This document shows positions 17,136 to 54,562 of a stretch of 64,000 bases of DNA, piece after piece. The position numbers were made by a program, and so were the translations under genes. The stretch lies in IMG/VR virus record IMGVR_UViG_3300028676_000003, positions 248,001 through 312,000 of that record. One strand, given 5' to 3'. The notes under the pieces were generated by a model. It was not told where the DNA came from. It was given only the letters and a program-made list of their open reading frames with translations, and made no database searches. How positions within the stretch are numbered: the stretch's first letter is position 1; every line of letters starts with the position of its first letter.

Positions 17136-17484
17136 ACAAACATACGATAATAAAGCAATTAGAGATTATATCAGAGATAATAGACATTATACTGATGAAA
17201 TGGTAGCAGATAAATTTGGAGTTTCTACTGGAGTTGTAAGTGCAAATAAAGCTCATATTACTATGGGTACAGATACCGATAATCCACAAAAAAGAGCAGA
17301 ACCTAAATTTGCAAAAACCTATCTTAAACAGTTAATTCTTATAAAAACTAGTGCTTATCATTTAATTATTGATGAGAATGGTGGTTATATGAGACTAGAT
17401 TTAAAGAATCGTAAACTTTCAAAATTAACTGATGAACAAGCTAAAGCTATTATGCTAAATAGACTACATGAAACATATAATTAA
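17128..17484 (+). CDS. hypothetical protein, possible N-terminal HTH
   Basis: TDEMVADKFGVSTGVV resembles an HTH. Confidence 0.5.
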   Translation: MSKQTYDNKAIRDYIRDNRHYTDEMVADKFGVSTGVVSANKAHITMGTDTDNPQKRAEPKFAKTYLKQLILIKTSAYHLIIDENGGYMRLDLKNRKLSKLTDEQAKAIMLNRLHETYN

Positions 17485-18412
17485 AGACATATTGTTTGGA
17501 CTTGCTGTTGGAGACGCTTTAGGTGTTCCAGTTGAGTTTCTATCAAGAGAAGAAATTGCAAGTAATCCAGTAACTGACATGCGTGAGTTCGGAACACACC
17601 ACCAACCCAAGGGAACTTGGTCTGATGATGCTTCACTAGCGTTTTGCTTGGCTGAATCACTTACCAAGGGTTATGATATCCAAGACATTGCGAATAACTT
17701 CGTTAAATGGAAGTATGCAAACCTATGGACTGCAAGAGATGTTGTATTTGATATCGGAATTGCTACAAGTGCCGCAATTGACAGAGTTTATCGAAAAACA
17801 AATCCTATTGAATGCGGTGGTGCTGATATTTCATCAAATGGTAATGGTTCTTTAATGAGAATCCTACCACTTTTGCCTGAATTAAAAAATCTAAGTATTG
17901 AAGATTCATTCAAAAAGGTAAGTGATGTTTCGTCTATTACACATAGACACCCAATTTCACTTATTTCATGTTTTTATTACATGGAATATGCTAATTTTTT
18001 AGCAACAGGAAATGATAGATTTGAATCATATCATTTGTTACGAAGACACTTCAGAACAATGGCCGAAGGAATGGGATTTGATGAAGAAACGATAAATAAA
18101 TTGAGCCGTTTGACTGATGAAAATATATTTGACATTCCAATGGACAAGATTCATAGTAGTGGATATGTGATTCATAGTCTTGAAGCAAGCATTTATAATA
18201 TTTTAACAACAAATTCTTATTCAGAAGCTGTTTTACAAGCCGTGAATATGGGTCAAGATACAGATACAACGGCCGCTATTACTGGTGGACTTGCTGGAAT
18301 GATATATGGATTTGATTCAATCCCAAAAGAATGGATAAATGAATTGGCTAGAAAAGAGGATATCTTGGACTTGGCCGATAGATACGAAAAAAAATTAAAA
18401 GAAAATGAGTAA
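17468..18412 (+). CDS. ADP-ribosylglycohydrolase (DraG/ARH family)
   Basis: GLAVGDALGVPVEF, GTWSDD, GNGSLMRI.P, SSITH and N.G.DTDTTAAITGGLAG. Confidence 0.95.
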   Translation: MKHIIKDILFGLAVGDALGVPVEFLSREEIASNPVTDMREFGTHHQPKGTWSDDASLAFCLAESLTKGYDIQDIANNFVKWKYANLWTARDVVFDIGIATSAAIDRVYRKTNPIECGGADISSNGNGSLMRILPLLPELKNLSIEDSFKKVSDVSSITHRHPISLISCFYYMEYANFLATGNDRFESYHLLRRHFRTMAEGMGFDEETINKLSRLTDENIFDIPMDKIHSSGYVIHSLEASIYNILTTNSYSEAVLQAVNMGQDTDTTAAITGGLAGMIYGFDSIPKEWINELARKEDILDLADRYEKKLKENE

Positions 18413-19637
18413 ACAAATCACACACGAATTCCTAGTAGAGAATGGACTGATATTATTCGAAACCATTATTGGTTCACAAGCATACGGTACTCAAACACCT
18501 GCAAGTGATATTGATAAGAAATTCGTGTATATCCTTCCTGAAGACTACATCTTAGGAACTGGTTATGTTGAACAAATCAACGTAAACAAAGATTACACAG
18601 GATGGGAGATTAGGCGTTTCTTATAACTTATGGGTTCAAACAATCCAACAGTACTAGAGCTTTTAAATAGCCCTGCTGACTGTATTATCTCAAAGCATCC
18701 TCTTTTTGACCTTATTCTTGAAAATAAAGACAAGTTTATCACCAAAATCTGTAAAGATTCGTTTGGTGGTTATGCAAGACAACAAATCAAGAAAGCAAAG
18801 GGCCTAAACAAGAAACAAAATTGGGAACACGATAAGGTAGTGAGAAAAGACCTATTAGATTTCTGTTATGTTATTGAAGGAGATAAATCAATTCCTTGGA
18901 GAAAATGGAACAACGGAAAATATGATGAAAAATTCATTGGTGCCGTAAATCTTCCAAACGCAAGAGACGTTTATGCTTTACACTACGATACAGTTGGTGA
19001 ATTGACTCATTCTGAGATTCATCCTGTTAAAGACAGAGAATACAGAAAAATTATTCTTAAAGAAGCTGGTAAACCAATGGGATTAGGATATAAAGGACTT
19101 ATCAACACTGGACAAGAAGACTCAGAAGGTAAGATTAACTATGGTATTTCAAACCAATTACGTCTATCTAGTATTCCAAAAGATGAAAAGGTTATTTGTA
19201 ACATAGTTTACAACAAAGATGGTTATTCAGAACACTGTAAAGATTTCAAAGAGTATGAAGAATGGTTGGAAAATCGTAATGAAGCTCGTTATGTTGAAAC
19301 ACAAGAACACGGTCAAAGAATTGATGGTAAGAATATGATGCATTGTATGCGACTTATCAAAATGTCTCAAGAAATCGGAGAAGGTAAAGGTATCATCGTT
19401 AGAAGACCTGATGCTCAAGAACTTCTTAAAATTAGACGTGGTGAGGTTGATTTAGAAACACTTATTGCGCTTGCCGATGAAGAGATTGAAAAGATGGATA
19501 AAATCTTTGATAATTCAAACCTTCCATCAAGCGTTGACAAGAAACTTGTTAACCAACTATTAATAAAAATCCGTAAAGGGTTCTATAAAAAAGAAAAAAA
19601 ATCATGGATATCTACTCTGCTCCAAAAGATACGATAA
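18405..19637 (+). pseudogene. DNA-pol-beta-superfamily nucleotidyltransferase (RlaP/YcgL-like) interrupted by an in-frame TAA at 18624-18626
   Basis: GSQAYG..TP.SD.D lies in the first ORF and continues in the same frame as WEIRRFL*LMGSNNP.VLELL; C-term DGKNMMHC.RL. Confidence 0.75.
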
Positions 19638-20158
19638 GAACAAATTCAGGGTTATTCATCAACGTGTTTGAGACTGACCCTGATACTATCATAATCGAAG
19701 ATGTTGCTCACGCACTAGCACACATGCCAAGATTTGGTGCTCACTTGGATGAATTTTATTCAGTTGCGCAACATAGCGTATATTGCTTTAATCTTGCAAT
19801 AATGCATGGACTTGAATACGGCCTAGCCGCTCTTCTTCACGATGCAAGTGAAGCATATATTCTAGATATGCCAACACCAATCAAGAGACACTTACCTGAT
19901 TATCAGGCGGTGGAACACAAGTTGATGATGGCTATTGCAAAGAAATTTGGTTTCGAGTTTCCATTGAATCCTGTTATTAAAGAAGTTGATAAAGAAGCAT
20001 TGGATTATGAGTATAAGAATATGGTAAACGAAGATACTAAGGGTCTTGACCCTAATTTCGTTATCATGACACCAAAAGAGGCTAAAGCTGAATTCCTAGC
20101 AATGTTTCAATTGATTCAAAAATATCTTGCAAAACAAGAGGTACACGAGGTTGATTAA
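19604..20158 (+). CDS. HD-domain 5'-deoxynucleotidase (YfbR-like)
   Basis: I.DVAHALA..PRF.AH...FYSVAQHS ... LLHDASEAY..D.PTP.K. Confidence 0.85.
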   Translation: MDIYSAPKDTIRTNSGLFINVFETDPDTIIIEDVAHALAHMPRFGAHLDEFYSVAQHSVYCFNLAIMHGLEYGLAALLHDASEAYILDMPTPIKRHLPDYQAVEHKLMMAIAKKFGFEFPLNPVIKEVDKEALDYEYKNMVNEDTKGLDPNFVIMTPKEAKAEFLAMFQLIQKYLAKQEVHEVD

Positions 20159-20481
20159 TCAACAAAAGGATTATGTTTTTGTAGAAATTTGATGTTATCA
20201 TCAGCAATTTCACAATCACCAATAAAAGCAAATACTTCTTCATCTGATAACTTACGCCATTCGTTTTTGGCTTCAGTTTTAGATGAAAAGTGCTTACGGT
20301 GCATCCAACGTTCTACTTTAAGGTAGTTGTTAGATTCGTAGAATTTAAGTAAGACGATTTTATCAGGATTACCTGTTTGAAGCTGTTTTACCCTCTTTTT
20401 CGGGTCGTTCTTGGTAATTCCAATTTTGTGTTTTTCGACACCATCTGTGTCGGTGCATAATAGTAAGTAGACATATCCCAT
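20155..20481 (-). CDS. GIY-YIG nuclease family protein (T5orf172/Mug113-like)
   Basis: GYVYL.......KIGIT.....R..QLQTGNP ... E...H ... EW. Confidence 0.8.
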   Translation of the reverse strand: MGYVYLLLCTDTDGVEKHKIGITKNDPKKRVKQLQTGNPDKIVLLKFYESNNYLKVERWMHRKHFSSKTEAKNEWRKLSDEEVFAFIGDCEIADDNIKFLQKHNPFVD

Positions 20482-20558
20482 AATACAAAGATACGAAGAA
20501 ATACCTGGTAGGTCAAGTAGTATCGAATAAAAAATTTAAAAAATAATTACAAAAAAGC

Positions 20559-20590
20559 TTGACTTATAAGAAAAAAGTTAGTACCTTTGT
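20559..20590 (+). promoter_or_regulatory. Bacteroidota sigma70-type promoter (TTG-N20-TACCTTTG) driving tRNA array 1
   Basis: TTG at 20559 and TACCTTTGT at 20582. The same 23-nt offset recurs at 29464/29487, 49350/49373 and 50543/50566, and about 25 TAcctTTGt copies precede genes across the window. Confidence 0.8.
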
Positions 20591-20642
20591 ATAACATTTA
20601 GAAATAAGTGTATATTTATAAACAAACAATAAACTAAAAATT

Positions 20643-20717
20643 ATGAAAACTTTAGCAAGCTTATTAGTCATTTTATTATGTTCACTAGTCGTGAACAGGG
20701 TGGGTTATGCCTGTTAA
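20643..20717 (+). CDS. leader peptide 1 (MKTLASLLVILLCSLVVNRVGYAC), Leu/Val/Cys-rich attenuator
   Basis: 24-aa ORF between promoter and terminator; 12 of 24 residues are L, V or C. Confidence 0.8.
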   Translation: MKTLASLLVILLCSLVVNRVGYAC

Positions 20718-20744
20718 GTAGAGTTATTTTTACTTAAACAATAT

Positions 20745-20781
20745 AATCCCATCTATTAAAATTAGATGGGATTTTTTTTTT
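20745..20781 (+). terminator. intrinsic terminator/attenuator of array 1
   Basis: AATCCCATCTA-loop-TAGATGGGATT plus T-run. Leader segment GGGTGGGTTAT (20698-20708) can pair with the 5' arm. Confidence 0.85.
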
Positions 20782-20789
20782 ACATATAT

Positions 20790-20872
20790 GCCGTGGTACC
20801 AAAGTGGTTGAATGGGGTGGTCTGCAAAACCATTAGCGAAAGCTCTCGTCGGTTCGAATCCGACCCACGGTT
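20790..20872 (+). tRNA. tRNA-Cys(GCA) with a long variable arm
   Basis: Cloverleaf, loop CTGCAAA, variable hairpin AGCGAAAGCT, T-loop TTCGAAT. Confidence 0.85.
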
Positions 20873-20886
20873 CAAAAAAGAGTATT

Positions 20887-21261
20887 ATGAATGAAATAGA
20901 AATCAAAAAAGACTTATATAAGTCTAAAGCAATGGCTAAATTTAGTCATTACAAAGCTGGTGAATTGTTTTACAATGTTGAACTGATAGACGGAATATAT
21001 CAATTCCCAATCTCAACAGTAGAAGATAAAGAAACTGAAGTGCTTTACGAAGTTAAGGTTGTTTCAAATAACATAGATGGTGAAAAGGCTTCTAAACAAG
21101 CAGAGCCTATCAAGATTATTGTTAATGAGAAACAATTATCAGAAGACTTAGGAGAAACTGAATTTGCTAATGAAATTAAGGGTTCTGAGTTGATTAGATG
21201 GATATTCAAAGCTATCAAGGCTGAAAAGATAAGAAAAATTGGTACCAAGCCAGTTCGTTAA
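20887..21261 (+). CDS. hypothetical protein
   Basis: Start reassigned to ATG 20887 because the track start lies inside tRNA-Cys. Confidence 0.6.
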   Translation: MNEIEIKKDLYKSKAMAKFSHYKAGELFYNVELIDGIYQFPISTVEDKETEVLYEVKVVSNNIDGEKASKQAEPIKIIVNEKQLSEDLGETEFANEIKGSELIRWIFKAIKAEKIRKIGTKPVR

Positions 21262-21315
21262 AACGGAGAAATAATTGGGTATCAAGGATAAAATAGGTAA
21301 CTCAGGTTACCATTT

Positions 21316-21387
21316 GGGAGTGTAGCTCAGAGGAAGAGCGGTTGTGTTACATACAACAGGTCGGGATTTCAAAATTCCCCGTTCCCA
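21316..21387 (+). tRNA. tRNA-Val(TAC)
   Basis: Stem GTTGT/ACAAC, loop GTTACAT. Confidence 0.85.
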
Positions 21388-21565
21388 CAAAAATAACGTA
21401 AACTAAAAAATACTGAATATGGATTTTAATTGTGTATATTGCAAAAAGTCTCACGGGGTTATGACAATAGTTGACGGAAATATGGTTCATCTATCCTGCT
21501 TGAAAGATTATATTGCTGAAAATGAGTATGATAGTGAAGTAGAAGAAATTCTTGAAGAATAAATC

Positions 21566-21639
21566 GTCGAGGTGGTGAAATTGGTAAACACGGTAAGTTC
21601 AAACCTTACATGCTGAGGGTTCGAGTCCCTTCTTCGATA
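21566..21639 (+). tRNA. tRNA-Leu(CAA), short variable loop
   Basis: GTAAG-TTCAAAC-CTTAC, Leu-type D arm, variable region only ATGCT. Confidence 0.85.
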
Positions 21640-21748
21640 CTGTTCTTGCACAAAGTGTAAGGGACTTGGGTGGGTGACTAGAGTCAATATGTTCACTGCA
21701 ATCGCAATCCCTAAAGTTGCGCTCCCCATCTACGGGATGGGGTATTTT

Positions 21749-21822
21749 GGCCCTGTAGCCCAATTGGTAGAGGCATCAGATTTAAATCCTGTATAGTGTG
21801 GGTTCGAATCCCATCGGGGCTA
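21749..21822 (+). tRNA. tRNA-Leu(TAA), short variable loop, weak anticodon stem
   Basis: TCAGA-TTTAAAT-CCTGT, canonical T arm. Confidence 0.7.
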
Positions 21823-21879
21823 CTACATCTCCCTAGGGAGAAGGTGCTGGTTGATGAGCTGACCTTATAGCTCATATTT

Positions 21880-21959
21880 GTCGGGGTGATGAAATTGGTA
21901 GACATGAGGTCCTTAAACGGCCTTGCTTAAGCATACGGGTTCGAGTCCCGTTCCCGATA
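21880..21959 (+). tRNA. tRNA-Leu(TAA)
   Basis: AGGTC-CTTAAAC-GGCCT, variable arm TGCTTAAGCA. Confidence 0.9.
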
Positions 21960-21974
21960 CTAAAAAGAAATAAA

Positions 21975-22190
21975 ATGGGAAAAATATTAGAAATAACAGA
22001 AAAGGTACCACAGGTTGCAAAGCTTCCTGATGGAGTTTACAACGGAACTTGGGGTGGTTATGTAATTGAACTTGTTTATCAAGGTAAAACATTTCAACTT
22101 AAAACAGAAGAAGGTGTCAGAGGTATGGGATTCAAGGTAGTTGTATTTGTAAAGGACGGAGTAGCAACCTATGAAGAAATAAATAACTAA
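21975..22190 (+). CDS. hypothetical protein
   Basis: ORF between tRNAs. Confidence 0.6.
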   Translation: MGKILEITEKVPQVAKLPDGVYNGTWGGYVIELVYQGKTFQLKTEEGVRGMGFKVVVFVKDGVATYEEINN

Positions 22191-22196
22191 AATAAT

Positions 22197-22270
22197 GCAC
22201 GTGTAGCCCAATTGGAAGAGGCGATGGTCTTAGAAGCCATACAGTGTGGGTTCGAATCCCATCATGTGTA
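22197..22270 (+). tRNA. tRNA-Leu(TAG), short variable loop
   Basis: ATGGT-CTTAGAA-GCCAT. Confidence 0.85.
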
Positions 22271-22539
22271 CAAAAACAAAGAAAATGGGAATATTAAAAA
22301 TTCATAATGCAGGATTAACAGGGTATTATTTGGAGCAAACTCTTGGTGGTAAACCTCTTATAGATTCAGGACTTATAATTAGTCAAGAAGACGATGATTC
22401 AGATGAACCATCAACAATTGAGCTTCATTATACTGATGAAAAGGACCTAGAAGCTAAGGTATCAATAATTATTGAAATGTTAACTGATAAATAATAGGAA
22501 ATGTCATTTATTTGTTATACCTTTGTAAAAAATTAAGCT

Positions 22540-22950
22540 ATGGATAATGTAATACTACTAGATTTAGACGGAGTTCTGATAACAACGAAGCCTTGGGAAT
22601 CAGATGTAATTATTGAAGACGGATTTGCCCAATTCAACGAAAAATCAGTTGCAAAGCTAAACGAATACTTGGAATCAACAGGCTACGATATAGTATTAAC
22701 TTCATCAAGACGTTATACGACTGAAATAGACCAAATGAACGAGTTTTTCAAGGCAAGAGGTATCAAAGGACAGATAATTCAATATCTTCCGTTATATGAC
22801 CTAGATTTGCGTTATTCAAGATATGATGAGGTAATGAGATTCATTATGAAGCATAGGCCTGAGAATTATTTGGTAATTGATGATGATAAGTCTCTTGCGA
22901 AGTTAGGTAACAACAAATGGATTAAAACTGACCCAATGATTGGTTTATGA
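22540..22950 (+). CDS. HAD-family phosphatase (HAD_SAK-like)
   Basis: LLDLDGVL, IVLTSSRR, R..E, YLVIDDD, TDP..GL. Confidence 0.8.
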   Translation: MDNVILLDLDGVLITTKPWESDVIIEDGFAQFNEKSVAKLNEYLESTGYDIVLTSSRRYTTEIDQMNEFFKARGIKGQIIQYLPLYDLDLRYSRYDEVMRFIMKHRPENYLVIDDDKSLAKLGNNKWIKTDPMIGL

Positions 22951-23183
22951 TAAGATATTTTTGCGATAACAAAAGACATATTGTATGTTTACCTTATTCC
23001 GTTGAAAATCTTCATAAGATGGCTGAGGACTTGGGTTTAAACAGAAGATGGTTTCATAAAGGGAAAAATAACAATTCTCATTATGATATGCCGATAAAAG
23101 AAATAGCAGTTATTACTGCAAAGTGTGAATTAGTAACCAGTGAAGAAATAGTTGATATTATACGTGGAAGATTTACAAAATAA
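22947..23183 (+). CDS. DUF4031-like protein
   Basis: LH.MA..LGL.RRWFH.......HYD.P. Confidence 0.6.
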   Translation: MIRYFCDNKRHIVCLPYSVENLHKMAEDLGLNRRWFHKGKNNNSHYDMPIKEIAVITAKCELVTSEEIVDIIRGRFTK

Positions 23184-23348
23184 GTTAGAAATACTAAATA
23201 GCAATTATTGGGAACATTTCAAGTTTGCTAAGGACTTGGCAGGGTTTTTAGCCCATGACCATCCTAGAAGACGAAGAATAGAAGAGAAGTTAAACGAAAT
23301 GGTTGATGAAATTCAAGAATTGAATCGACTATTACAAAATAAAAACAA

Positions 23349-23424
23349 GGGAGTATAGCTCAGTTGGTTCAGCAGCGTCTCGTTTACACCGAGAAGGTCG
23401 GGGGTTCGAATCCCTCTACTCCTA
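23349..23424 (+). tRNA. tRNA-Val(TAC)
   Basis: TCTCG-TTTACAC-CGAGA. Confidence 0.9.
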
Positions 23425-23428
23425 CTAA

Positions 23429-23507
23429 AAGATAGTTTCAGCAAGCAAACGGTTAAAAATTTGTCTCATAAACAAACTGAGTGGTTCAATCCCACAAAAC
23501 TATCTTG
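23429..23507 (+). ncRNA. CAGCAA-stem element (skipping-rope-like) enclosing a Met(CAT) anticodon arm and a T arm
   Basis: AAGATAGTT.CAGCAA ... TTTGT-CTCATAA-ACAAA, GTGG-TTCAATC-CCAC ... AACTATCTT-G. Confidence 0.6.
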
Positions 23508-23512
23508 AATTT

Positions 23513-23595
23513 GGCCGAGTGGTGGAATTGGTAGACACGCTAGTTTAAGAAGCTAGTGCTGTAATGGCATGCGGGTTCGAGTCCCGCCTTGGTCA
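23513..23595 (+). tRNA. tRNA-Leu(AAG), A34
   Basis: CTAGT-TTAAGAA-GCTAG, Leu D arm, long variable arm. Confidence 0.85.
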
Positions 23596-23617
23596 CAAAC
23601 GTTTTAAATAAATTATT

Positions 23618-24886
23618 ATGGAAAATACAGAATATGTCTGTGTAATGTTCCCTTATCCTTCAGGAGATGGATTACATGTTGGGCATGTCTATAACTACGC
23701 AATCGTCGATAGTTATTGCCGATGGAAACGTTACAATAAAATTCCAGTCTTTCAACCATTTGGATATGATTCATTTGGATTGCCAGCGGAAAACTACGCA
23801 AAAAAGGTCGGTAGAGACCCAAAAGAAGTCACTTACGAAAATATCGCAAAGTTCCGTAAACAAATGGAACGAATGAACACTCAATATGAAGAATTATTAG
23901 TTACATCTGATGAATCTTACTATGTATGGAGTCAAAGATTATTTACTGAATTACATAGCAGAGGGTTAGCCTACCAAAAGATGGGTCCTGTAAATCATTG
24001 TTCAAGCTGTGAAACAGTCTTGGCTAATGAACAAGTTAAGGACGACCATTGTGAAAGATGTGGTACAAGAGTAGAAATCAAAGATTTAAACCAATGGTAT
24101 TTCAAAATTACTGACTATAAGCAACGATTAATTGATAACTTGGATAAGATTGATTATCCTGAGAAAACAAAGAAACAGCAATTGCATTGGTTAGAGAACT
24201 TAAATGATTGGTGTGTTTCAAGACAGCGAAAATGGGGAACTCCAATACCGTTGATTGATTCAGAAGACACCTTAGATACATTCGTTGATAGTTCATTCTA
24301 TTTTTTAAGATACTTGGACCCAAATAACTTAGAAGAATTGGTTGATATCAATAAAGCTAAGCAAGTTGACTTATATGTTGGTGGAAACGAACATGCTTGT
24401 ATGCACTTGATTTATGCTAGGTTTATCACGATGTTCTTACATGATTGTGGTTATATCCCTTTTGATGAGCCTTTTAAGAAGGTAATTCACCAAGGAATGA
24501 TTACTCATAATGGAGAAAAAATGTCCAAGTCAAAAGGCAACGTAATAAATCCTGATGATTATGACCCTGATGAATTGAGGTTATATTCAATGTTTATCGG
24601 CCATTATTTTGACGGTGGAGATTGGGATGATTCAAAGATTAGCGGAATTAGACGTTTTATTGGAAGATTTGGTAAATGGACAAATGAATCTACTCAAGAA
24701 GGTGAAACTATTGACTTAACAGCATTTAAAGAGACTATTAATGGTTATGTAATATCGTTTAAGTTCAATAAGGTTGTTAGTACATTCATGGAGTTTTACA
24801 ACAAGAATAAGAACAAAACATTAAGTGTATCAACAGCTAACGATTTGATTGAAATCTTACGTGTGTTTGCACCGAGTTTTAAATAA
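23618..24886 (+). CDS. leuS: minimal leucyl-tRNA synthetase (no CP1 editing domain, truncated C-terminus)
   Basis: MFPYPSG.GLHVGH, GYDSFGLPAEN, Zn knuckle, DWCVSRQR.WGTPIP, DTFVDSS.YFLRY, GG.EHA.MHL.YARF and KMSKS; only 422 aa. Confidence 0.9.
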   Translation: MENTEYVCVMFPYPSGDGLHVGHVYNYAIVDSYCRWKRYNKIPVFQPFGYDSFGLPAENYAKKVGRDPKEVTYENIAKFRKQMERMNTQYEELLVTSDESYYVWSQRLFTELHSRGLAYQKMGPVNHCSSCETVLANEQVKDDHCERCGTRVEIKDLNQWYFKITDYKQRLIDNLDKIDYPEKTKKQQLHWLENLNDWCVSRQRKWGTPIPLIDSEDTLDTFVDSSFYFLRYLDPNNLEELVDINKAKQVDLYVGGNEHACMHLIYARFITMFLHDCGYIPFDEPFKKVIHQGMITHNGEKMSKSKGNVINPDDYDPDELRLYSMFIGHYFDGGDWDDSKISGIRRFIGRFGKWTNESTQEGETIDLTAFKETINGYVISFKFNKVVSTFMEFYNKNKNKTLSVSTANDLIEILRVFAPSFK

Positions 24887-24892
24887 AATAAT

Positions 24893-25747
24893 ATGAAAAA
24901 AGTATTGGTTACTGGCGCAAATAGTCAGTTAGCATCTGAAATCAAGGAACTAGAGCTTAATTATCCTAGACTTGAATTCATCTTTGCTGATAAGACAGAA
25001 TTTCCGCTGGACAAGAAAGAAGACATAATTACTAACTTTAAGAAGATAAAGCCCGATGTTGTAATCAATTGTGCGGCTTATACCGCAGTTGATAAGGCAG
25101 AAGACGATACAATGACAGCAGACGCTGTAAATCGTTTAGGTGTAGGTATTCTTGCCAAGTTATGTCATGAATCTGACACACAACTAATCCACATTTCAAC
25201 AGACTACGTATTTGATGGTGAATCTCCGATTCCTTATAAAGAAGACGATATTCCAAATCCAAAAAATGCTTATGGTCTTACGAAACTAGCGGGTGAAATG
25301 GTTTGTCAAGAGAATTGTCCTAATAGTGTCGTAATCAGAACATCTTGGTTGTATTCCATCTTTGGAAACAATTTCGTGAAGACAATGCTTAGACTAATGA
25401 GTGAAAGAGATACCTTCGGTGTTGTAAATGACCAAATTGGTTCTCCAACATATGCTGGCGACTTGGCTCAAGCTATCATGGATATCATAGAGTTTAAGAC
25501 TTGGATTGGTGGAATATATCACTATTCAAATGAAGGTAATATTTCATGGTTTGAATTTGCACTAGCAATCAAAGAAATAGCTGAAGAGACTTGTAATATC
25601 AAGCCAATTGATTCATCAAGTTATCCAACACCAGCAAAGCGACCCAATTATTCGTTACTAGATAATACCAAGATACAAGAAGTCTATGGAATACAAACCA
25701 TTGATTATCTGATAAGTCTGAGAAGGATGATGGAAAAACTAGGTTAA
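24893..25747 (+). CDS. rfbD: dTDP-4-dehydrorhamnose reductase
   Basis: LVTGA..QL, NCAAYTAVDKAE, HISTDYVFDG, YG.TKL.GE, DQIGSPTY, PAKRP.YS.L. Confidence 0.95.
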   Translation: MKKVLVTGANSQLASEIKELELNYPRLEFIFADKTEFPLDKKEDIITNFKKIKPDVVINCAAYTAVDKAEDDTMTADAVNRLGVGILAKLCHESDTQLIHISTDYVFDGESPIPYKEDDIPNPKNAYGLTKLAGEMVCQENCPNSVVIRTSWLYSIFGNNFVKTMLRLMSERDTFGVVNDQIGSPTYAGDLAQAIMDIIEFKTWIGGIYHYSNEGNISWFEFALAIKEIAEETCNIKPIDSSSYPTPAKRPNYSLLDNTKIQEVYGIQTIDYLISLRRMMEKLG

Positions 25748-25785
25748 GTAGCTTCATTTTTATATGTTATTGGATATTTATTAGT

Positions 25786-26130
25786 ATGGAAACAAAATCA
25801 CTAATAAAAAAACTACTACATGAAAATCTTTTAAAAGAGGAATTCAATTATGAAATAGAACACCTAGATAGCTACAATGGACAAGATAATTACGAATTGG
25901 GGTTATATCAAGACGGTGAAATCATTGGACTTGTTCAATATACAATTTATAACGATATCTTAAAGGTTAGCGATATTCTTGTTAGACCTGAATATCGTAG
26001 GCAAGGAATGGGTTCAAGAATGATGCAATACATTAAAACCAAGCATCCAACAGCTAAATATGAACCATCAATGATGACTGATTTAGGAGCCCAATTTAAA
26101 CATAAGGAAATACAAGATTTAAATAAATAA
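25786..26130 (+). CDS. GNAT-family acetyltransferase
   Basis: I.VRPEYRRQGMGS motif A. Confidence 0.75.
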   Translation: METKSLIKKLLHENLLKEEFNYEIEHLDSYNGQDNYELGLYQDGEIIGLVQYTIYNDILKVSDILVRPEYRRQGMGSRMMQYIKTKHPTAKYEPSMMTDLGAQFKHKEIQDLNK

Positions 26131-26195
26131 AAAAAATAAGCTAATGATTAGGTTCGTTAGCTTTTTTTATTTACCTTTGTTAAAAATTAAACGAT

Positions 26196-29463: not shown

Positions 29464-29495
29464 TTGACTTATGTACTAACTTTTAGTACCTTTGT
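29464..29495 (+). promoter_or_regulatory. promoter upstream of leader 2
   Basis: TTGACT ... TACCTTTGT, followed by ATATTTAT at 29498. Confidence 0.8.
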
Positions 29496-29530
29496 ATATA
29501 TTTATTAAACAAACGAATAAACACAATATT

Positions 29531-29614
29531 ATGAGAACACTTACAAACATATTTGATTTTGCATTTACAGCAGCCGAAGAGGATTACTCTTGGGAAGGTC
29601 AACTAGTGTCGTAA
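29531..29614 (+). CDS. leader peptide 2 (MRTLTNIFDFAFTAAEEDYSWEGQLVS), Phe/Asp/Ala/Glu-rich attenuator
   Basis: 27-aa ORF; codons 8-18 (FDFAFTAAEED) are 10/11 F, D, A or E. Confidence 0.8.
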   Translation: MRTLTNIFDFAFTAAEEDYSWEGQLVS

Positions 29615-29640
29615 GTTAAGTAATATTAACAATACAATCA

Positions 29641-29674
29641 AGAGTCTGACCATAAAACGTCAGACTTTTTTTTT
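29641..29674 (+). terminator. intrinsic terminator/attenuator of array 2
   Basis: AGTCTGAC-loop-GTCAGACT plus T-run. Leader segment GGTCAACT (29597-29604) can pair with the 5' arm. Confidence 0.8.
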
Positions 29675-29749
29675 GGAAAAAATGTTCTTTAAAATTTTGA
29701 AATTAAGAAAATAAGTATTACCTTTGTATCATCAAAAAATATAAGGATT

Positions 29750-31129: not shown

Positions 31130-31200
31130 GAAGCGTTCGTCTAGTGGACCAGGACACAGCCAATGGGGCTGAAACACAGGTTCGAGTCCTGTACGCTTTG
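31130..31200 (+). ncRNA. Glu-type tRNA body with a 5-nt anticodon loop
   Basis: GAAGCGT/ACGCTTT, D arm GTCTAGTGGACCAGGAC, CAGCC-AATGG-GGCTG. Confidence 0.65.
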
Positions 31201-31290
31201 CAATTAAGAGCACGTGGAAGTACGATAGCCCCCACAGTATAGAAAAAAACTAAGGTATCGTTGACTTCATGGTGGAAAGAAACCATATTT

Positions 31291-33533: not shown

Positions 33534-33618
33534 GGGAGTGTAGCTCAGTTGGTAGAGCAGGATGTATAGGAATGCATACTTTAAATCTGTGTCAATGGTT
33601 CGATTCCATTCACTCTTA
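33534..33618 (+). ncRNA. tRNA-like RNA with an enlarged anticodon arm
   Basis: Canonical D arm (AGCTCAGTTGGTAGAGC) and T arm; about 20 nt in the anticodon-loop position. Confidence 0.6.
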
Positions 33619-33627
33619 CAAAATATT

Positions 33628-38731: not shown

Positions 38732-38850
38732 ATAGTAGTCGTCTAGTGGACAAAGACACCGCCCCTGTATTCGTGTATGAGGTTCGACTCCTCTTTAGCA
38801 GTGGTGGTATGACGTAGGTGGAAACATTGGTTCAAATCCAATCTGCTGTA
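38732..38850 (+). ncRNA. Glu/Asp-type tRNA body with an ~50-nt insertion in the anticodon loop
   Basis: ATAGTAG/CTGCTGT, D arm GTCTAGTGGACAAAGAC; the CCGCC/GGTGG stem encloses a second T-arm (GAGG-TTCGACT-CCTC). Confidence 0.6.
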
Positions 38851-49315: not shown

Positions 49316-49387
49316 CTAGAAAAAAAATAAAAAATAATTGGTAAAACACTTGACTTGTAAAGAAAATTGTCGTACCTTTGTAGTATA

Positions 49388-50195
49388 TTAATAAGATGTT
49401 GGTTCGCCCATGCTTTTTAACATAAGGCCGCTTATGGTCTTCAGGATAAACATAGTGATATGTAGAAAGCGATTTAGCGGAAGCAAGATTGCGTTGGGAA
49501 TTTATTACCAATCCGAGTAAGCGATGATAAACGCAGTGTTTATGTAAAGGCAACAAGAGACAAAATCTGTTGGAGTTGGAAGTAAACATTATAGCCCAAA
49601 TTTTGATTCATGGGTTATTGAGTACGAAAGTATAATAGAGGTTTATCAGGATTTGGTGAATAACTGTAAAAGGGGAATAAGCTGGGTCCAGTATTTAGAT
49701 TATGGTGTAGCTGAAAGGTGATATTAATCGAAGGTACCATGTTCGAGAGAGCATATCGGGGTGTCGTTAGCTGGGCTACTCAAAAGGTAGTACGTTAGCA
49801 AATCTGAGGACACATCCTGAACTGAAATGAATCGATGCAATTTATTTAGGTTTTTAACCTGAAATATCTTTTAAGAAAAGGAAATTTTATAAAAAGCAAA
49901 AGTTCCTCAGAACATGATTTGAAAAATGAGTTATACTGTTGTAAAATACAGTTGTTGCTAGGCCGCAAGCCAAAGTGACAAAATAAAGTAAGTAGTTCTA
50001 AGCTAATAGCCCGCAAGCTATGCAGACTCGCAAGGTCAGTCGGATGAAAATGGAGTTTATATAGAATCATGTAGTGATTGCAGAATCGTATATCTGTCTC
50101 ATTGTTGACTATTCCTGTAGCAATATAGGTGTGTGTAACAAACCGAAAGGTTTCAAAACGTCAACAGTATAGCTGAACACTCAGGCGACTACAAA
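49388..50195 (+). ncRNA. large structured ncRNA, GOLLD-like
   Basis: About 800 nt with no plausible + ORF and its own promoter (49350-49381). Many GNRA-capped hairpins (GCAA, GAAA) and a CTCAAAAGG element, next to tRNAs. Family assignment is from memory only. Confidence 0.55.
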
Positions 50196-50253: not shown

Positions 50254-50326
50254 TCCGTGTTAGAGCAGTCAGGTAGCTCGCTCCCGTGTGAGGGAGAGGT
50301 CAGGGGTTCGAATCCTTTACACGGTA
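50254..50326 (+). ncRNA. initiator-like tRNA body with a 6-nt anticodon loop
   Basis: 1:72 mismatch, D stem GAGC/GCTC, CTCCC-GTGTGA-GGGAG. Confidence 0.65.
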
Positions 50327-50542
50327 CTAATTTTTACTAGACATATTAATTAAATTCGGGAGCAATACATATAGTATTGAATAGGTGGAAACCCTTATGC
50401 TCCCACTAGGCTTCGTAATTAGGAAATATGGATGCGGTTAAAAGAAACGACCAAAGATAAGGTTTCACGGCAAAAGGCTCTATTCGTTAACCAGCGAGCT
50501 TTTACTTATCTTTGGAAATTTCAAAAAAAAATGACAAAAGGC

Positions 50543-50574
50543 TTGCTTTTTACAAAAATAGTTAGTACCTTTGT
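50543..50574 (+). promoter_or_regulatory. promoter upstream of leader 3
   Basis: TTG ... TACCTTTGT; ATATTTAT at 50625. Confidence 0.8.
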
Positions 50575-50665
50575 ATAAGAAATAAAAAAATAAACAGAAA
50601 AACAAAACTTTTGCTAAAAGCAATATATTTATAATAAACGTAGAAATACACAACAAACAGAAATT

Positions 50666-50773
50666 ATGACAACAAGTACCACATATCAAACGCAAAAACA
50701 ACAACCTAAAGGCGGGAAGCCTTATGGCTTGGCTGGGTGTGTCAACAACTTGTTTGACTTAGTTACAATATAA
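50666..50773 (+). CDS. leader peptide 3 (MTTSTTYQTQKQQPKGGKPYGLAGCVNNLFDLVTI), Thr/Tyr/Gln/Lys/Pro/Gly-rich attenuator
   Basis: 35-aa ORF; codons 2-21 are 19/20 T, Y, Q, K, P or G. Confidence 0.85.
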   Translation: MTTSTTYQTQKQQPKGGKPYGLAGCVNNLFDLVTI

Positions 50774-50797
50774 TTAGTAGTAATACTGATTTTGTAG

Positions 50798-50832
50798 ACC
50801 CAGCTTAATGTAAAAATTAGGCTGGGTTTTTT
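50798..50832 (+). terminator. intrinsic terminator/attenuator of array 3
   Basis: ACCCAGCTTAAT-loop-ATTAGGCTGGGT plus T-run. The leader carries an identical GGCTGGGT at 50731-50738. Confidence 0.85.
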
Positions 50833-50837
50833 CATTT

Positions 50838-50910
50838 CGGGGGATAGCTTATATGGTAAAGCACTGACCGTTGGGGTCAGGAGAATGAGGTTCGAGTACT
50901 CATCTACCGA
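50838..50910 (+). tRNA. Pro-type tRNA body with an atypical anticodon loop (CGTTGGG)
   Basis: C1:G72, A73; CTGAC-CGTTGGG-GTCAG lacks U33. Confidence 0.6.
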
Positions 50911-54451: not shown

Positions 54452-54524
54452 GCGAGTGTAGCTCAGTTGGCAGAGCACCTGATTACCAATTAGGTTGTCG
54501 TGGGTTCGAATCCCATCACTCGCT
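54452..54524 (+). tRNA. tRNA-Gly(ACC), A34
   Basis: GCG-start, U73 Gly body; CCTGA-TTACCAA-TTAGG. Confidence 0.85.
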
Positions 54525-54562
54525 CTCTTGACTTTTTGGTACCATCTAGTATATTTATATAC

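What the first reader, a model, noticed from the sequence alone, without database searches (positions are those of the whole stretch)
20643..20781. Attenuator 1: Leu/Val/Cys leader before the Cys-Val-Leu array and LeuRS
MKTLASLLVILLCSLVVNRVGYAC has 6 Leu (5 TTA, 1 CTA), 4 Val and 2 Cys. GGGTGGGTTAT at codons 19-22 can pair with ATAATCCCATCT, the terminator 5' arm. Downstream lie Cys, Val x2, Leu x5 (including two TAA and one TAG anticodons) and LeuRS. Taken alone the peptide could pass for a signal peptide; the context argues otherwise.
Basis: partly seen in the sequence, partly recalled or inferred. Interest (0 to 1): 0.8.

Follow-up and report, generated by a model that had tools for sequence, protein, structure and literature searches.

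The report
Leader-peptide attenuator controlling phage tRNA genes
A giant phage of Bacteroidota-like hosts places a tiny Leu/Val/Cys-rich reading frame and a conditional transcription stop directly before its Cys-Val-Leu tRNA genes. Related phages do the same with peptides that always spell the amino acids of the tRNAs that follow, so these viruses appear to switch tRNA supply on when decoding of those codons runs short.

Summary
At 20643-20717 a 24-codon ORF (6 Leu, 4 Val, 2 Cys) follows a Bacteroidota-type promoter. A strong terminator (20745-20773, then T10) follows it and ends 8 nt before tRNA-Cys. ORF codons 19-23 pair with the terminator's 5' arm (-12.8 kcal/mol), forming an antiterminator.

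The same design recurs twice in the window and in dozens of related huge-phage contigs, including the published LR745206.1. The peptide always matches the downstream tRNAs:
- LSLSLSLSLSLS before Ser/Leu
- LYYLYLYLY before Tyr/Leu
- QQQQQQ before Gln
- REREERE before Glu/Arg
- TTYQTQKQQPKGGKPYG before Gln/Lys/Pro/Gly/Tyr/Thr

Statistical support:
- Peptide-to-array match: 0 of 20,000-50,000 permutations reach the observed score.
- Antiterminator pairing: likewise 0 permutations.
- Matching residues sit 5-11 codons upstream of the antiterminator strand (76-95% versus 17% background), as a stalled-ribosome footprint predicts.

Corrections: the "LeuRS" is a 422-aa catalytic core only, and a promoter-like box lies between it and the attenuator. 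No Rfam family matched, and six full-text literature searches found no description of such attenuators. This looks like classical ribosome-mediated attenuation applied to viral tRNA arrays. No experiment has tested it.

The parts
20559..20565 (+). -33-like promoter element TTGACTT
   Evidence: Read from the sequence. The same cTTGACTT element precedes the sister attenuator promoter at 29487 and the promoter at 49373, with a variant cTTGCTTT at 50566.
20582..20591 (+). -7 promoter box TACCTTTGTA (Bacteroidota type, TAnnTTTG)
   Evidence: 35 matches in the window against 7.1 expected, almost all on the + strand and mostly just upstream of ORF starts.
20643..20717 (+). Leader ORF, 24 codons plus TAA: MKTLASLLVILLCSLVVNRVGYAC
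   Evidence: z = 5.0 for enrichment in {C,L,V}. Homologues are L040 MKNLSLQLVLVLCLLVADWVGYAC, and L014/L081 MFTTITILVLCLLSSVVLL....
20652..20681 (+). Inferred sensing codons 4-13 (TTA GCA AGC TTA TTA GTC ATT TTA TTA TGT). A ribosome stalled here leaves the antiterminator strand free.
   Evidence: Constrained folds keep the 11-12-bp antiterminator for stalls at codon 15 or earlier and lose it from codons 16-20 onward. The family-wide positional profile agrees.
20679..20697 (+). Hairpin inside the ORF (TGTTCAC TAGTC GTGAACA); possible RNA polymerase pause or spacer hairpin
   Evidence: L040 keeps it with two compensatory pair changes (C-G to U-A, A-U to G-C) although the encoded residues change.
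20697..20710 (+). Antiterminator 5' strand AGGGTGGGTTATGC (codons 19-23)
   Evidence: Duplex with 20742-20755 at -12.8 kcal/mol. Present in the MFE of the transcript lacking the terminator's 3' arm.
20712..20739 (+). Spacer hairpin overlapping the stop codon; becomes the apical hairpin of the antiterminator
20742..20755 (+). Antiterminator 3' strand, which is also the terminator 5' arm (TATAATCCCATCTA)
20745..20781 (+). Intrinsic terminator: 11-bp stem, 7-nt loop, run of 10 T
   Evidence: 11 pairs, 4 GC. dG -14.7 kcal/mol. It ends 8 nt before tRNA-Cys.
20790..23596 (+). Regulated tRNA array: Cys(gca), Val(tac), Leu(caa), Leu(taa) x2, Leu(tag), Val(tac), Leu(aag), interspersed with small ORFs and a HAD_SAK_2 gene
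23618..24886 (+). LeuRS-like catalytic core (422 aa), same strand and same unit. An internal -7 box at 22518 means control by the attenuator may be partial.
26138..26163 (+). Terminator that probably ends the transcription unit (after the RmlD-like and GNAT genes)
   Evidence: The next -7 box is at 26172.
29487..29677 (+). Sister attenuator 2: -7 box, ORF 29531-29614 MRTLTNIFDFAFTAAEEDYSWEGQLVS, terminator 29640-29669 plus T-run. Further downstream lies the Phe/Glu/His/Asp/Gln/Ala array.
   Evidence: The homologue L014 MRNFNDIFEFNFAAFAEEDDCI lies before Phe Phe Glu Glu Asp Asp.
50566..50836 (+). Sister attenuator 3: -7 box, ORF 50666-50773 MTTSTTYQTQKQQPKGGKPYGLAGCVNNLFDLVTI, terminator 50797-50828 plus T-run. 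The Gln/Lys/Pro/Gly/Tyr/Thr array starts at 50838.
   Evidence: 19 of the first 20 residues are in the array's set (p = 5e-9).

Best explanation
This is a ribosome-mediated (leader-peptide) transcription attenuator that gates read-through from a phage promoter into the Cys-Val-Leu tRNA array and, at least partly, the LeuRS-like gene.

Proposed sequence of events:
1. Transcription starts a few bases after the -7 box at 20582-20591.
2. A ribosome translates the 24-codon leader while RNA polymerase transcribes the rest of the leader.
3. If decoding of the Leu (TTA), Val or Cys codons at positions 4-13 is slow, because usable charged tRNA for them is scarce, the ribosome stalls there. The strand at 20697-20710 stays free and pairs with 20742-20755. 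The terminator hairpin cannot form, and polymerase runs into the tRNA genes.
4. If decoding is fast, the ribosome reaches codons 17-25 or the stop codon and covers that strand. The terminator forms at 20745-20773 plus T10 and the transcript ends 8 nt before tRNA-Cys.

The output (tRNAs for the same amino acids) relieves the signal, so this would be a negative-feedback, on-demand tRNA supply.

Shown by computation: the parts, the alternative pairings, the match between peptide and array across many phages, and the position rule. Inferred: translation of the ORF, transcription-translation coupling, the direction of regulation, and the physiological trigger.
For: 1. Anatomy. Promoter box, ORF, antiterminator and terminator are all present, and tRNA-Cys starts 8 nt after the T-run with no TTTG box in between.

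2. Three such elements occur in the window, each keyed to its own array.

3. Comparative evidence. The peptide tracks the array in relatives found through the LeuRS-like gene:
- L011/L056 MKTTLSLSLSLSLSLSGW... before Ser/Leu
- L015 ...LYYLYLYLY... before Tyr plus Leu x7
- L007/L119 MTTMNLNM(N/T)MNLT... before Asn/Ile/Leu/Val/Thr/Met
- L052 ...REREERE... before Glu x2 and Arg x3
- L108 MKNLSLHSLSYLS... before His Ser Ser Tyr Leu Leu
- L012/L018 MKHFSSHKHSFKFWF... before His/Trp/Phe/Lys/Ser
- poly-Q before Gln x3-5 in nine loci (L004, L041, L042, L051, L054, L067, L085, L092, L119)

4. Permutation of arrays among elements. Summed z was 67.5 against a null of 13.4 +/- 6.8 (0 of 50,000), and 198 against 48.9 +/- 12.4 for 55 unique elements (0 of 20,000).

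5. Antiterminator specificity. Cognate leader versus terminator 5' arm gave -12.5 against -7.8 kcal/mol (14 elements, 0 of 50,000), and -11.6 against -8.1 (37 elements, 0 of 20,000).

6. Position rule. Array-matching residues are 76-95% at codon offsets -11 to -5 from the antiterminator strand. They fall to 3-38% at offsets -3 to +5, against a 17% background. This fits a ribosome footprint.

7. Compensatory changes.
- L014 versus L081 change GAGAGC to TCGGGC in the leader together with AGCTCTT to AGCCCGATTG in the terminator arm.
- W versus L040 keep the in-ORF hairpin through two double changes.

8. Constrained folding. The antiterminator survives stalls at codon 15 or earlier and is lost for ribosomes at codon 17-20 or later, or at the stop.
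Against: 1. There are no expression data, so translation of the ORF and conditional termination are not shown.

2. At equilibrium the terminator fold is always the more stable one, so the switch must be kinetic. This is also true of the trp attenuator (my own knowledge).

3. Without any ribosome, the truncated transcript also folds into the antiterminator. The untranslated state would therefore read through unless the weak, G-U-rich pairing of 20655-20664 with 20700-20710 forms first. That pairing is not checked for conservation.

4. Leader codons are not enriched for exact Watson-Crick cognates of the array's anticodons (84 of 187 against 87.5 expected). The key is at amino-acid or wobble level, which leaves open whether tRNA amount or charging is sensed.

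5. The polymerase that reads these promoters, and whether it couples to ribosomes, is unknown.

6. For A1 alone, Leu/Val richness is also what any hydrophobic peptide shows.
Confidence: 0.85

Rival explanations
1. The attenuator is real, but what it reports is not phage or host tRNA supply as such. It could report amino-acid starvation or charging status, or host anti-phage attack on tRNAs by anticodon nucleases. It could also work as an infection timer, firing when host tRNAs decay. The mechanism is the same; the physiological input differs.
For: The match is at amino-acid level, not exact codon-anticodon level. RNA-repair-like genes (RlaP-like, HAD_SAK_2, HD, ADP-ribosylglycohydrolase) sit around the array. 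A LeuRS-like gene lies in the same unit.
Against: Making more tRNA does not cure amino-acid starvation, so pure starvation sensing gives no benefit. Nothing in the sequence discriminates between these inputs.
Confidence: 0.3
2. The ORF encodes a functional small hydrophobic (signal-like or membrane) peptide with its own promoter and terminator. The tRNAs are made by leaky read-through, and the Leu/Val/Cys match is coincidence.
For: MKTLASLLVILLCSLVV has the look of a signal or transmembrane segment. C-terminal VGYAC is conserved in L040.
Against: - There is no mature domain after the hydrophobic stretch.
- Sister and homologous elements encode non-hydrophobic peptides (poly-Q, REREERE, LSLSLS, HKHSFKFWF) in the same architecture.
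- Composition follows the array.
- VGYAC overlaps the antiterminator strand, which explains its conservation.
- The in-ORF hairpin is kept by compensatory changes while the residues change.
Confidence: 0.04
3. The hairpin is a constitutive terminator or insulator, or an RNA processing signal, or the 3' end of a small RNA. The ORF and the complementary segment are incidental.
For: Terminator-like hairpins also occur inside the array (21724-21742).
Against: A constitutive stop 8 nt before the first tRNA, with no promoter behind it, would silence the array. The cognate-specific antiterminator complementarity and the position rule are not expected for an insulator.
Confidence: 0.05
4. The leader RNA is a translation-independent riboregulator, for example T-box-like direct binding of uncharged tRNA.
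For: T-boxes control aminoacyl-tRNA synthetase genes by terminator/antiterminator choice (PMC1262725 discusses them).
Against: - There is no T-box or other Rfam match at gathering score or at E <= 10 in 20480-20800.
- The leaders are only about 140 nt.
- The signal is periodic in codons and reads as peptides that match up to eight different amino acids. A single specifier codon cannot do this.
Confidence: 0.02

Closest known systems
Classical leader-peptide attenuators of amino-acid biosynthesis operons (trpL, hisL, leuL, thrL, pheL, and the multivalent ilv leaders with Leu/Val/Ile codons)
   Same: A short ORF rich in the sensed codons, an antiterminator that competes with an intrinsic terminator, and ribosome position deciding the outcome. 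Several amino acids can be sensed by one leader, as in ilv and thr. (Established knowledge; Bacteroidetes/Chlorobi examples were predicted by Vitreschak et al. 2004, cited in PMC1262725.)
   Different: The regulated genes are tRNA genes, not biosynthetic enzymes. The element is viral. One genome carries several leaders, each a different 'barcode' of up to six to eight amino acids matching its own array. There is no sequence similarity to the Rfam leader families.
Attenuators upstream of aminoacyl-tRNA synthetase genes: pheST (pheM leader) in gamma-proteobacteria; predicted leuS and trpS attenuators in Streptomyces (PMC1262725)
   Same: A leader peptide rich in the cognate amino acid controls a component of the decoding machinery. 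Here a LeuRS-like gene lies in the unit behind a Leu-rich leader.
   Different: Here the first and main products are the tRNAs themselves. The LeuRS-like gene is 2.9 kb downstream, behind an internal promoter-like box.
T-box riboswitches
   Same: The logic is the same: a shortage in a specific tRNA/charging system induces genes of that system through a terminator/antiterminator choice.
   Different: T-boxes bind tRNA directly and need no translation. No T-box features or Rfam hit are found here.
Rfam Leu_leader (RF00512) and Phe_leader (RF01859)
   Same: There are weak sub-threshold resemblances driven by the terminator region. L004's Leu/Val/Phe leader scores 35.5 bits against Leu_leader (GA 50). 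The window's A1 scores 19.2 bits against Phe_leader (GA 55).
   Different: All scores are below the gathering thresholds, so this is not a member.

Membership tests
Ribosome-mediated (leader-peptide) transcription attenuator | Short ORF in the 5' leader enriched in codons of the sensed amino acid(s) | tested here: met
   12 of 23 residues are Leu/Val/Cys against 15% background, p = 3e-5. Family-wide permutation tests gave 0 of 50,000 and 0 of 20,000.
Ribosome-mediated (leader-peptide) transcription attenuator | Intrinsic terminator between the leader ORF and the regulated genes, with no promoter behind it | tested here: met
   The stem at 20745-20773 plus T10 ends 8 nt before tRNA-Cys, with no TAnnTTTG box in between. 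27 unique elements have the terminator 36 nt or less from the first tRNA.
Ribosome-mediated (leader-peptide) transcription attenuator | Antiterminator pairing that uses the terminator's 5' arm and a strand a terminating ribosome would cover | tested here: met
   20697-20710 pairs with 20742-20755 at -12.8 kcal/mol. The stop codon lies 5 nt after the strand. The pairing is lost in folds with a ribosome at codon 17-20 or later. Cognate specificity: 0 of 20,000 permutations.
Ribosome-mediated (leader-peptide) transcription attenuator | Sensing codons placed so that a stalled ribosome leaves the antiterminator strand free | tested here: met
   Matching residues peak 5-11 codons upstream of the strand (76-95%) and drop to background next to it.
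Ribosome-mediated (leader-peptide) transcription attenuator | Anti-antiterminator (1:2) pairing that enforces termination when the leader is not translated | tested here: inconclusive
   A G-U-rich pairing of 20655-20664 with 20700-20710 appears in the full-length MFE. The antiterminator wins in the truncated fold, and conservation was not checked.
Ribosome-mediated (leader-peptide) transcription attenuator | Termination depends on translation of the leader and on charged-tRNA supply | not testable with these tools
   Needs reporter, in vitro or transcriptome experiments.
Amino-acid biosynthesis operon leaders (trp/his/leu/ilv type) | The regulated genes are biosynthetic enzymes for the sensed amino acid | tested here: not met
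   Downstream are eight tRNA genes, small ORFs, a HAD_SAK_2 gene, a LeuRS-like core, an RmlD-like gene and a GNAT gene.
Rfam leader families (Leu_leader RF00512, Phe_leader RF01859 and others) | Covariance-model score at or above the gathering threshold | tested here: not met
   The only hits at gathering score in the window are tRNAs. The best leader-family hit in 20480-20800 is Phe_leader at 19.2 bits against GA 55.
T-box riboswitch | Stem I with specifier loop, and a T-box antiterminator bulge | tested here: not met
   There is no T-box match at gathering score or at E <= 10.
Secretory signal peptide or lipoprotein precursor | An N-terminal signal followed by a mature protein | tested here: not met
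   The ORF stops at codon 25. Only 11 residues follow the 'LLC' motif.

The most novel reading that the evidence does not exclude
Huge phages of Bacteroidota run a modular, codon-demand-driven tRNA economy. The tRNA complement is split into arrays, and each array sits behind a short 'barcode' peptide that lists its amino acids. Each array is therefore switched on separately when ribosomes stall on those codons, for instance after host tRNA decay or cleavage by anti-phage anticodon nucleases. As far as the searches here show, that would be the first case of leader-peptide attenuation controlling tRNA genes, and the first in a virus. It would also be a natural, re-programmable sensor of decoding capacity.
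Probability: 0.6. Interest if true: 0.92.

Novelty: new variant of a known kind. Interest (0 to 1): 0.88.

Why it matters
Phage tRNA genes are usually treated as constitutively expressed codon-usage patches or as spares against host tRNA-cleaving defences. How their expression is controlled is essentially unknown.

Here the sequence itself suggests a control logic. Each tRNA array is read only when ribosomes have trouble with exactly the amino acids that array serves. This extends classical attenuation, until now a device of amino-acid biosynthesis operons and a few synthetase genes, to non-coding RNA products and to viruses.

It would also explain two other observations:
- why tRNAs in these genomes are grouped by amino acid;
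- dozens of unannotated intergenic regions in published huge-phage genomes such as LR745206.1.

The idea is directly testable with short reporters. The leaders are naturally diverse and modular (poly-Q, LS repeats, RE repeats and others), which could make them useful as specific sensors of decoding capacity.

Tried and rejected
- **Exact codon-anticodon keying.** Leader codons are not enriched for Watson-Crick cognates of the array's anticodons relative to each locus's codon usage (84 of 187 against 87.5 expected). The neat one-codon-per-isoacceptor look of L011 (10 of 12 against 8.3 expected) is not significant on its own.
- **Rfam.** No known family matches at gathering score. The low-threshold hits on 20480-20800 are terminator-driven noise.
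- **Megablast of 19000-26000 against GenBank phages.** This returned only LR745206.1 (73% over part of the LeuRS-like gene) and a tRNA-Val fragment.
- **The 124-aa ORF at 20887-21261 as an anchor.** It found only the window's own contig.
- **An in-frame LeuRS read-through.** The 422-aa and 284-aa ORFs share a frame across a TAA, but the second is a complete RmlD-like reductase behind an ordinary TAA-6 nt-ATG junction. They are separate genes and no recoding is needed.
- **D/W/C/Y/H-rich short ORFs plus terminators in L004, L055 and L059.** They looked like another leader class. However, they are followed by a promoter region and then the real Leu/Val/Phe leader, and they score negative against the arrays. 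They were treated as ordinary small genes.
- **Terminator-like hairpins inside array 1 (21724-21742, 21855-21874) with chance ORFs.** They lack promoter, architecture and homologues, so they are not counted as attenuators.
- **Literature.** Six full-text searches and a term search within the huge-phage paper found no description of leader-peptide control of phage tRNA genes. Absence from that library is not proof of absence.
Full report
**Context**

The window has 34.6% G+C and carries 40 tRNA genes called by ARAGORN, 37 of them confirmed by Rfam. Nearly all genes lie on the + strand. It is identical to part of a 368.5-kb viral contig, IMGVR_UViG_3300028676_000003 / Ga0302167_10000008.

The decamer TACCTTTGTA occurs 35 times (at most one mismatch) against 7.1 expected, almost always on the + strand just upstream of ORFs. 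It contains TAnnTTTG, the -7 element of Bacteroidota promoters (established knowledge).

The nearest GenBank phage is the 634.8-kb uncultured phage LR745206.1. It comes from the study that assigned its genomes of more than 634 kb to Bacteroidetes hosts (PMC7162821). So this is a huge phage, probably of a Bacteroidota host.

**The observation**

- A -33-like TTGACTT (20559-20565) and the -7 box (20582-20591) precede an A-rich, unstructured 5' region.
- The ORF at 20643-20717 encodes MKTLASLLVILLCSLVVNRVGYAC. It has TTA x5 and CTA x1 for Leu; GTC x2 and GTG x2 for Val; and TGT x2 for Cys.
- An 11-bp hairpin (20745-20773, dG -14.7 kcal/mol) followed by a run of 10 T ends at 20781.
- tRNA-Cys starts at 20790. 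No promoter box fits in between, so the array can only be transcribed by reading through this terminator.
- The segment AGGGTGGGTTATGC (codons 19-23) pairs with TATAATCCCATCTA, which includes the terminator's 5' arm, at -12.8 kcal/mol. This pairing is the minimum-energy fold of the transcript as long as the 3' arm has not been made.
- The leader region as a whole folds better than shuffles (z = -3.3).

Two corrections apply.
1. The 'LeuRS' (23618-24886) is a 422-aa LeuRS-family catalytic core. It matches bacterial LeuRS structures at E = 1e-79 in two blocks that skip the CP1 editing domain. It lacks the C-terminal domains and scores below the NCBIfam leuS cut-off. The next ORF is in the same frame across a TAA, but it is a separate RmlD-like gene.
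2. A further -7 box at 22518 lies inside the unit, so control of the LeuRS-like gene by this leader may be partial.

The unit probably ends at the terminator 26138-26163.

**Sister elements in the window**

Listing the first ORFs behind every -7 box revealed two more elements with the same promoter flavour, the same A-rich 5' region, and the same short ORF, spacer hairpin and terminator.
- 29531-29614 encodes MRTLTNIFDFAFTAAEEDYSWEGQLVS, with its terminator at 29640-29669. It lies upstream of the Phe, Phe, Glu, His, Glu, Asp, Asp, Glu, Gln, Ala array. In this phage two promoter-bearing protein genes intervene.
- 50666-50773 encodes MTTSTTYQTQKQQPKGGKPYGLAGCVNNLFDLVTI, with its terminator at 50797-50828. 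It lies directly before Gln, Lys x3, Pro x2, Gly x2, Gln x3, Tyr x2, Thr x2, Gly.

In the third element, 19 of the first 20 residues belong to the six amino acids of the array (p = 5e-9). The 3 x 3 table of leaders against arrays is diagonal-dominant: 12/23, 12/26 and 21/34 on the diagonal against 2/23 to 7/34 off it. All three fold into an antiterminator when the terminator's 3' arm is withheld.

**Relatives**

Using the LeuRS-like protein as an anchor I fetched 36 viral and 80 metagenomic loci at 60-74% protein identity. I scanned them with one fixed rule: a hairpin plus T-run upstream of a tRNA, with an ATG ORF of 10-50 codons ending within 110 nt before it. The peptide follows the array every time the terminator abuts a tRNA.

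| Locus | Leader peptide | Downstream tRNAs |
|---|---|---|
| L040 | MKNLSLQLVLVLCLLVADWVGYAC | Cys Val Val Leu Leu Leu |
| L014, L081 | MFTTITILVLCLLSSVVLL... | Cys (Cys) Val (Val) Leu x4 Val |
| L014 | MRNFNDIFEFNFAAFAEEDDCI | Phe Phe Glu Glu Asp Asp |
| L011, L056 | MKTTLSLSLSLSLSLSGW... | Ser/Leu arrays |
| L015 | MKNRVNINLYYLYLYLYQ... | Tyr, Leu x7 |
| L007, L060, L047, L049 | N/I/L/T/V/M/C-rich leaders | Asn/Ile/Leu/Thr/Val/Met/Cys arrays |
| L052 | MNISINIREREEREPN... | Glu Glu Arg Arg Arg |
| L108 | MKNLSLHSLSYLSPL... | His Ser Ser Tyr Leu Leu |
| L012, L018 | MKHFSSHKHSFKFWF... | His His Trp Phe (Trp) Lys... |
| L012, L018 | M(K/N)TI(S/F)SSSRSS... | Ser Arg (one uncalled tRNA in L012) Ser |
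| L085, L092 | ...PQPQDQDP... | Asp/Pro/Gln |
| L004, L041, L042, L051, L054, L067, L085, L092 | poly-Q leaders | Gln x3-5 |

The published genome LR745206.1 has three such elements as well.

**Statistics**

*Peptide versus array.* For every terminator I took the best-scoring candidate ORF. I then compared the summed z-score with the same statistic after permuting arrays among terminators, which controls for choosing the best ORF.
- Viral loci plus the window: observed 67.5 against 13.4 +/- 6.8, with 0 of 50,000 permutations reaching it.
- After dropping the closest homologues: 49.8 against 11.9 +/- 5.6, again 0 of 50,000.
- 55 unique elements: 198 against 48.9 +/- 12.4, 0 of 20,000.

*Antiterminator specificity.* The duplex energy between each leader and its own terminator's 5' arm averages -12.5 kcal/mol, against -7.8 for mismatched leader/arm combinations (14 elements, 0 of 50,000). 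For 37 elements the values are -11.6 against -8.1 (0 of 20,000).

*Position.* The antiterminator strand starts at a median of 61 nt from the ATG (range 45-81). Relative to it, array-matching residues make up 76-95% of codons at offsets -11 to -5. They fall to 46%, 38%, 22% and 3% at offsets -4 to -1, and are 7-37% at offsets 0 to +5, against a 17% background.

This is what the mechanism requires. A ribosome whose A site is five or more codons upstream leaves the strand free, and one that is closer covers it. The elements in this profile were chosen by overall composition. The landmark, however, is defined by RNA pairing alone, so the positional peak is not a consequence of that choice.

**Covariation in the A1 family**
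- The window and L040 share the 24-codon frame. The in-ORF hairpin (ORF nt 38-54) is kept through two double substitutions (C-G to U-A, A-U to G-C) and one U-A to U-G change, while the encoded residues change (S-L-V-V-N to L-L-V-A-D).
- Their terminator stems are unrelated in sequence (AATCCCATCTA against GAAAGCCTATCC), yet each pairs with the nearly constant GGGTGGG(T/C)TAT of the leader.
- L014 and L081 have almost identical sensing parts. They differ in the antiterminator strand (AAGAGAGCT against CAGTCGGGCT), and the terminator arm differs to match (AGCTCTT against AGCCCGATTG).

**Mechanism for this element**

Constrained folds with a 29-nt footprint give the following.
- With the ribosome's A site at codons 4-15, the 11-12-bp antiterminator is the best fold of the nascent RNA.
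- At codons 16 and 17 it shrinks to 8 and 5 pairs.
- From codon 20 to the stop codon it is gone, leaving the terminator as the only option.

The effective sensing codons are therefore about 4-13: five TTA, one GTC and one TGT.

At equilibrium the terminator fold is more stable in every state. The choice must therefore be kinetic, as in the trp attenuator (my own knowledge).

The state without any ribosome is unresolved. A G-U-rich pairing of 20655-20664 with the antiterminator strand appears in the full-length fold and could act as an anti-antiterminator, but I did not test its conservation.

**What is sensed**

Leader codons are not enriched for exact Watson-Crick partners of the array's anticodons (84 of 187 against 87.5 expected). 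Many are the wobble-read codons (CAT, AAT, TTT, TAT). The key therefore works at the level of the amino acid or decoding family.

The simplest reading is negative feedback on decoding capacity. Few usable charged tRNAs cause stalling. Stalling allows read-through, which yields more tRNA (and the LeuRS-like protein).

The sequence does not show whether the natural trigger is host tRNA decay during infection, host anticodon nucleases, codon-usage mismatch or charging. RNA-repair-like genes around the array (RlaP-like, HD, HAD_SAK_2, ADP-ribosylglycohydrolase) fit a theme of tRNA damage and repair, but they prove nothing.

**Comparison with known systems**
- The architecture is that of classical leader-peptide attenuators. 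The multivalent leaders recall ilv and thr.
- Control of a decoding component recalls pheST and the predicted Streptomyces leuS and trpS attenuators (PMC1262725).
- It is not a member of any Rfam leader family or of the T-box family. One relative's leader gives a sub-threshold Leu_leader hit of 35.5 bits against GA 50.
- The differences are the regulated product (tRNA genes), the viral setting, and the set of differently keyed leaders within one genome.
- Six full-text searches and a term search within the huge-phage paper found no description of this. That supports novelty but cannot prove it.

**Verdict**

It appears to be a general regulatory design of tRNA arrays in a clade of huge phages. 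I rate it a new variant of a known kind. My confidence in the attenuator mechanism is 0.85, and it is lower for the physiological trigger.

Noticed in passing
window 49756-50187 (+), promoter -7 box at 49373, odd tRNA at 50254-50327: A full-length but sub-threshold match to GOLLD RNA (RF02032: 95.6 bits against GA 150, E = 2e-25, model positions 1-416). It lies in an ~870-nt ORF-free, GNRA-loop-rich region driven by the same promoter class as the attenuators. A tRNA-like gene with an abnormal anticodon loop lies about 65 nt downstream.
   Followed up: partly
window 23618-24886 (+): A 'mini-LeuRS': a 422-aa LeuRS-family catalytic core without the CP1 editing domain or the C-terminal tRNA-binding domains. 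It is conserved at about 420 aa in more than 100 viral and metagenomic loci. Whether it charges tRNA-Leu is unknown.
   Followed up: partly
window 21566-21640, 21749-21823, 22197-22271 (tRNA-Leu); 20790-20873 (tRNA-Cys): Three of the five tRNA-Leu genes are only 75 nt and lack the long variable arm typical of bacterial tRNA-Leu. The tRNA-Cys(gca) is 84 nt and has a long variable arm. These unusual identity features sit beside a truncated LeuRS.
   Followed up: no
window 33534-33619 (+); also L012, L007, L119: A tRNA-like gene with an 8-nt anticodon loop, read by ARAGORN as the four-base anticodon 'agga' (Pro|Ser). Similar calls occur in relatives: ctga, acat, gtag. These are possible quadruplet or frameshift-type tRNAs, or mis-calls.
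   Followed up: no
window 31130-31201, 54452-54525, 23513-23596: tRNAs with A at anticodon position 34: His(atg), Gly(acc) and Leu(aag). His and Gly with A34 are unusual for bacterial-type systems.
   Followed up: no
window 38732-38850 (+); L004 8987-9122: Rfam tRNA matches of 119 and 136 nt that ARAGORN did not call, probably intron-containing tRNA genes. The array contents used in my statistics are therefore slightly incomplete.
   Followed up: no
window 17468-20158 and 22540-22950 (+): A cluster of RNA-repair-like genes around array 1: ADP-ribosylglycohydrolase, an RlaP-like nucleotidyltransferase, an HD-domain protein, and the HAD domain of 'Swiss Army Knife' RNA repair proteins.
   Followed up: no
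window 20155-20481 (-): A T5orf172/GIY-YIG-like gene (possible homing endonuclease) is transcribed divergently from the attenuator promoter. Its own -7-like box is at 20484-20493 on the minus strand.
   Followed up: no
window 21724-21742 (+): A terminator-like hairpin, CCCCATCTACGGGATGGGG plus TATTTT, lies between Leu(caa) and Leu(taa). Its arms resemble the A1 terminator arms (CCCATCT/AGATGGG). It may be an internal partial stop or a processing site.
   Followed up: no
L119 (LR745206.1 384960-425834): 2741, 21744, 22679: The published, unannotated 634.8-kb huge-phage genome carries three of these leader/terminator/tRNA-array elements.
   Followed up: yes
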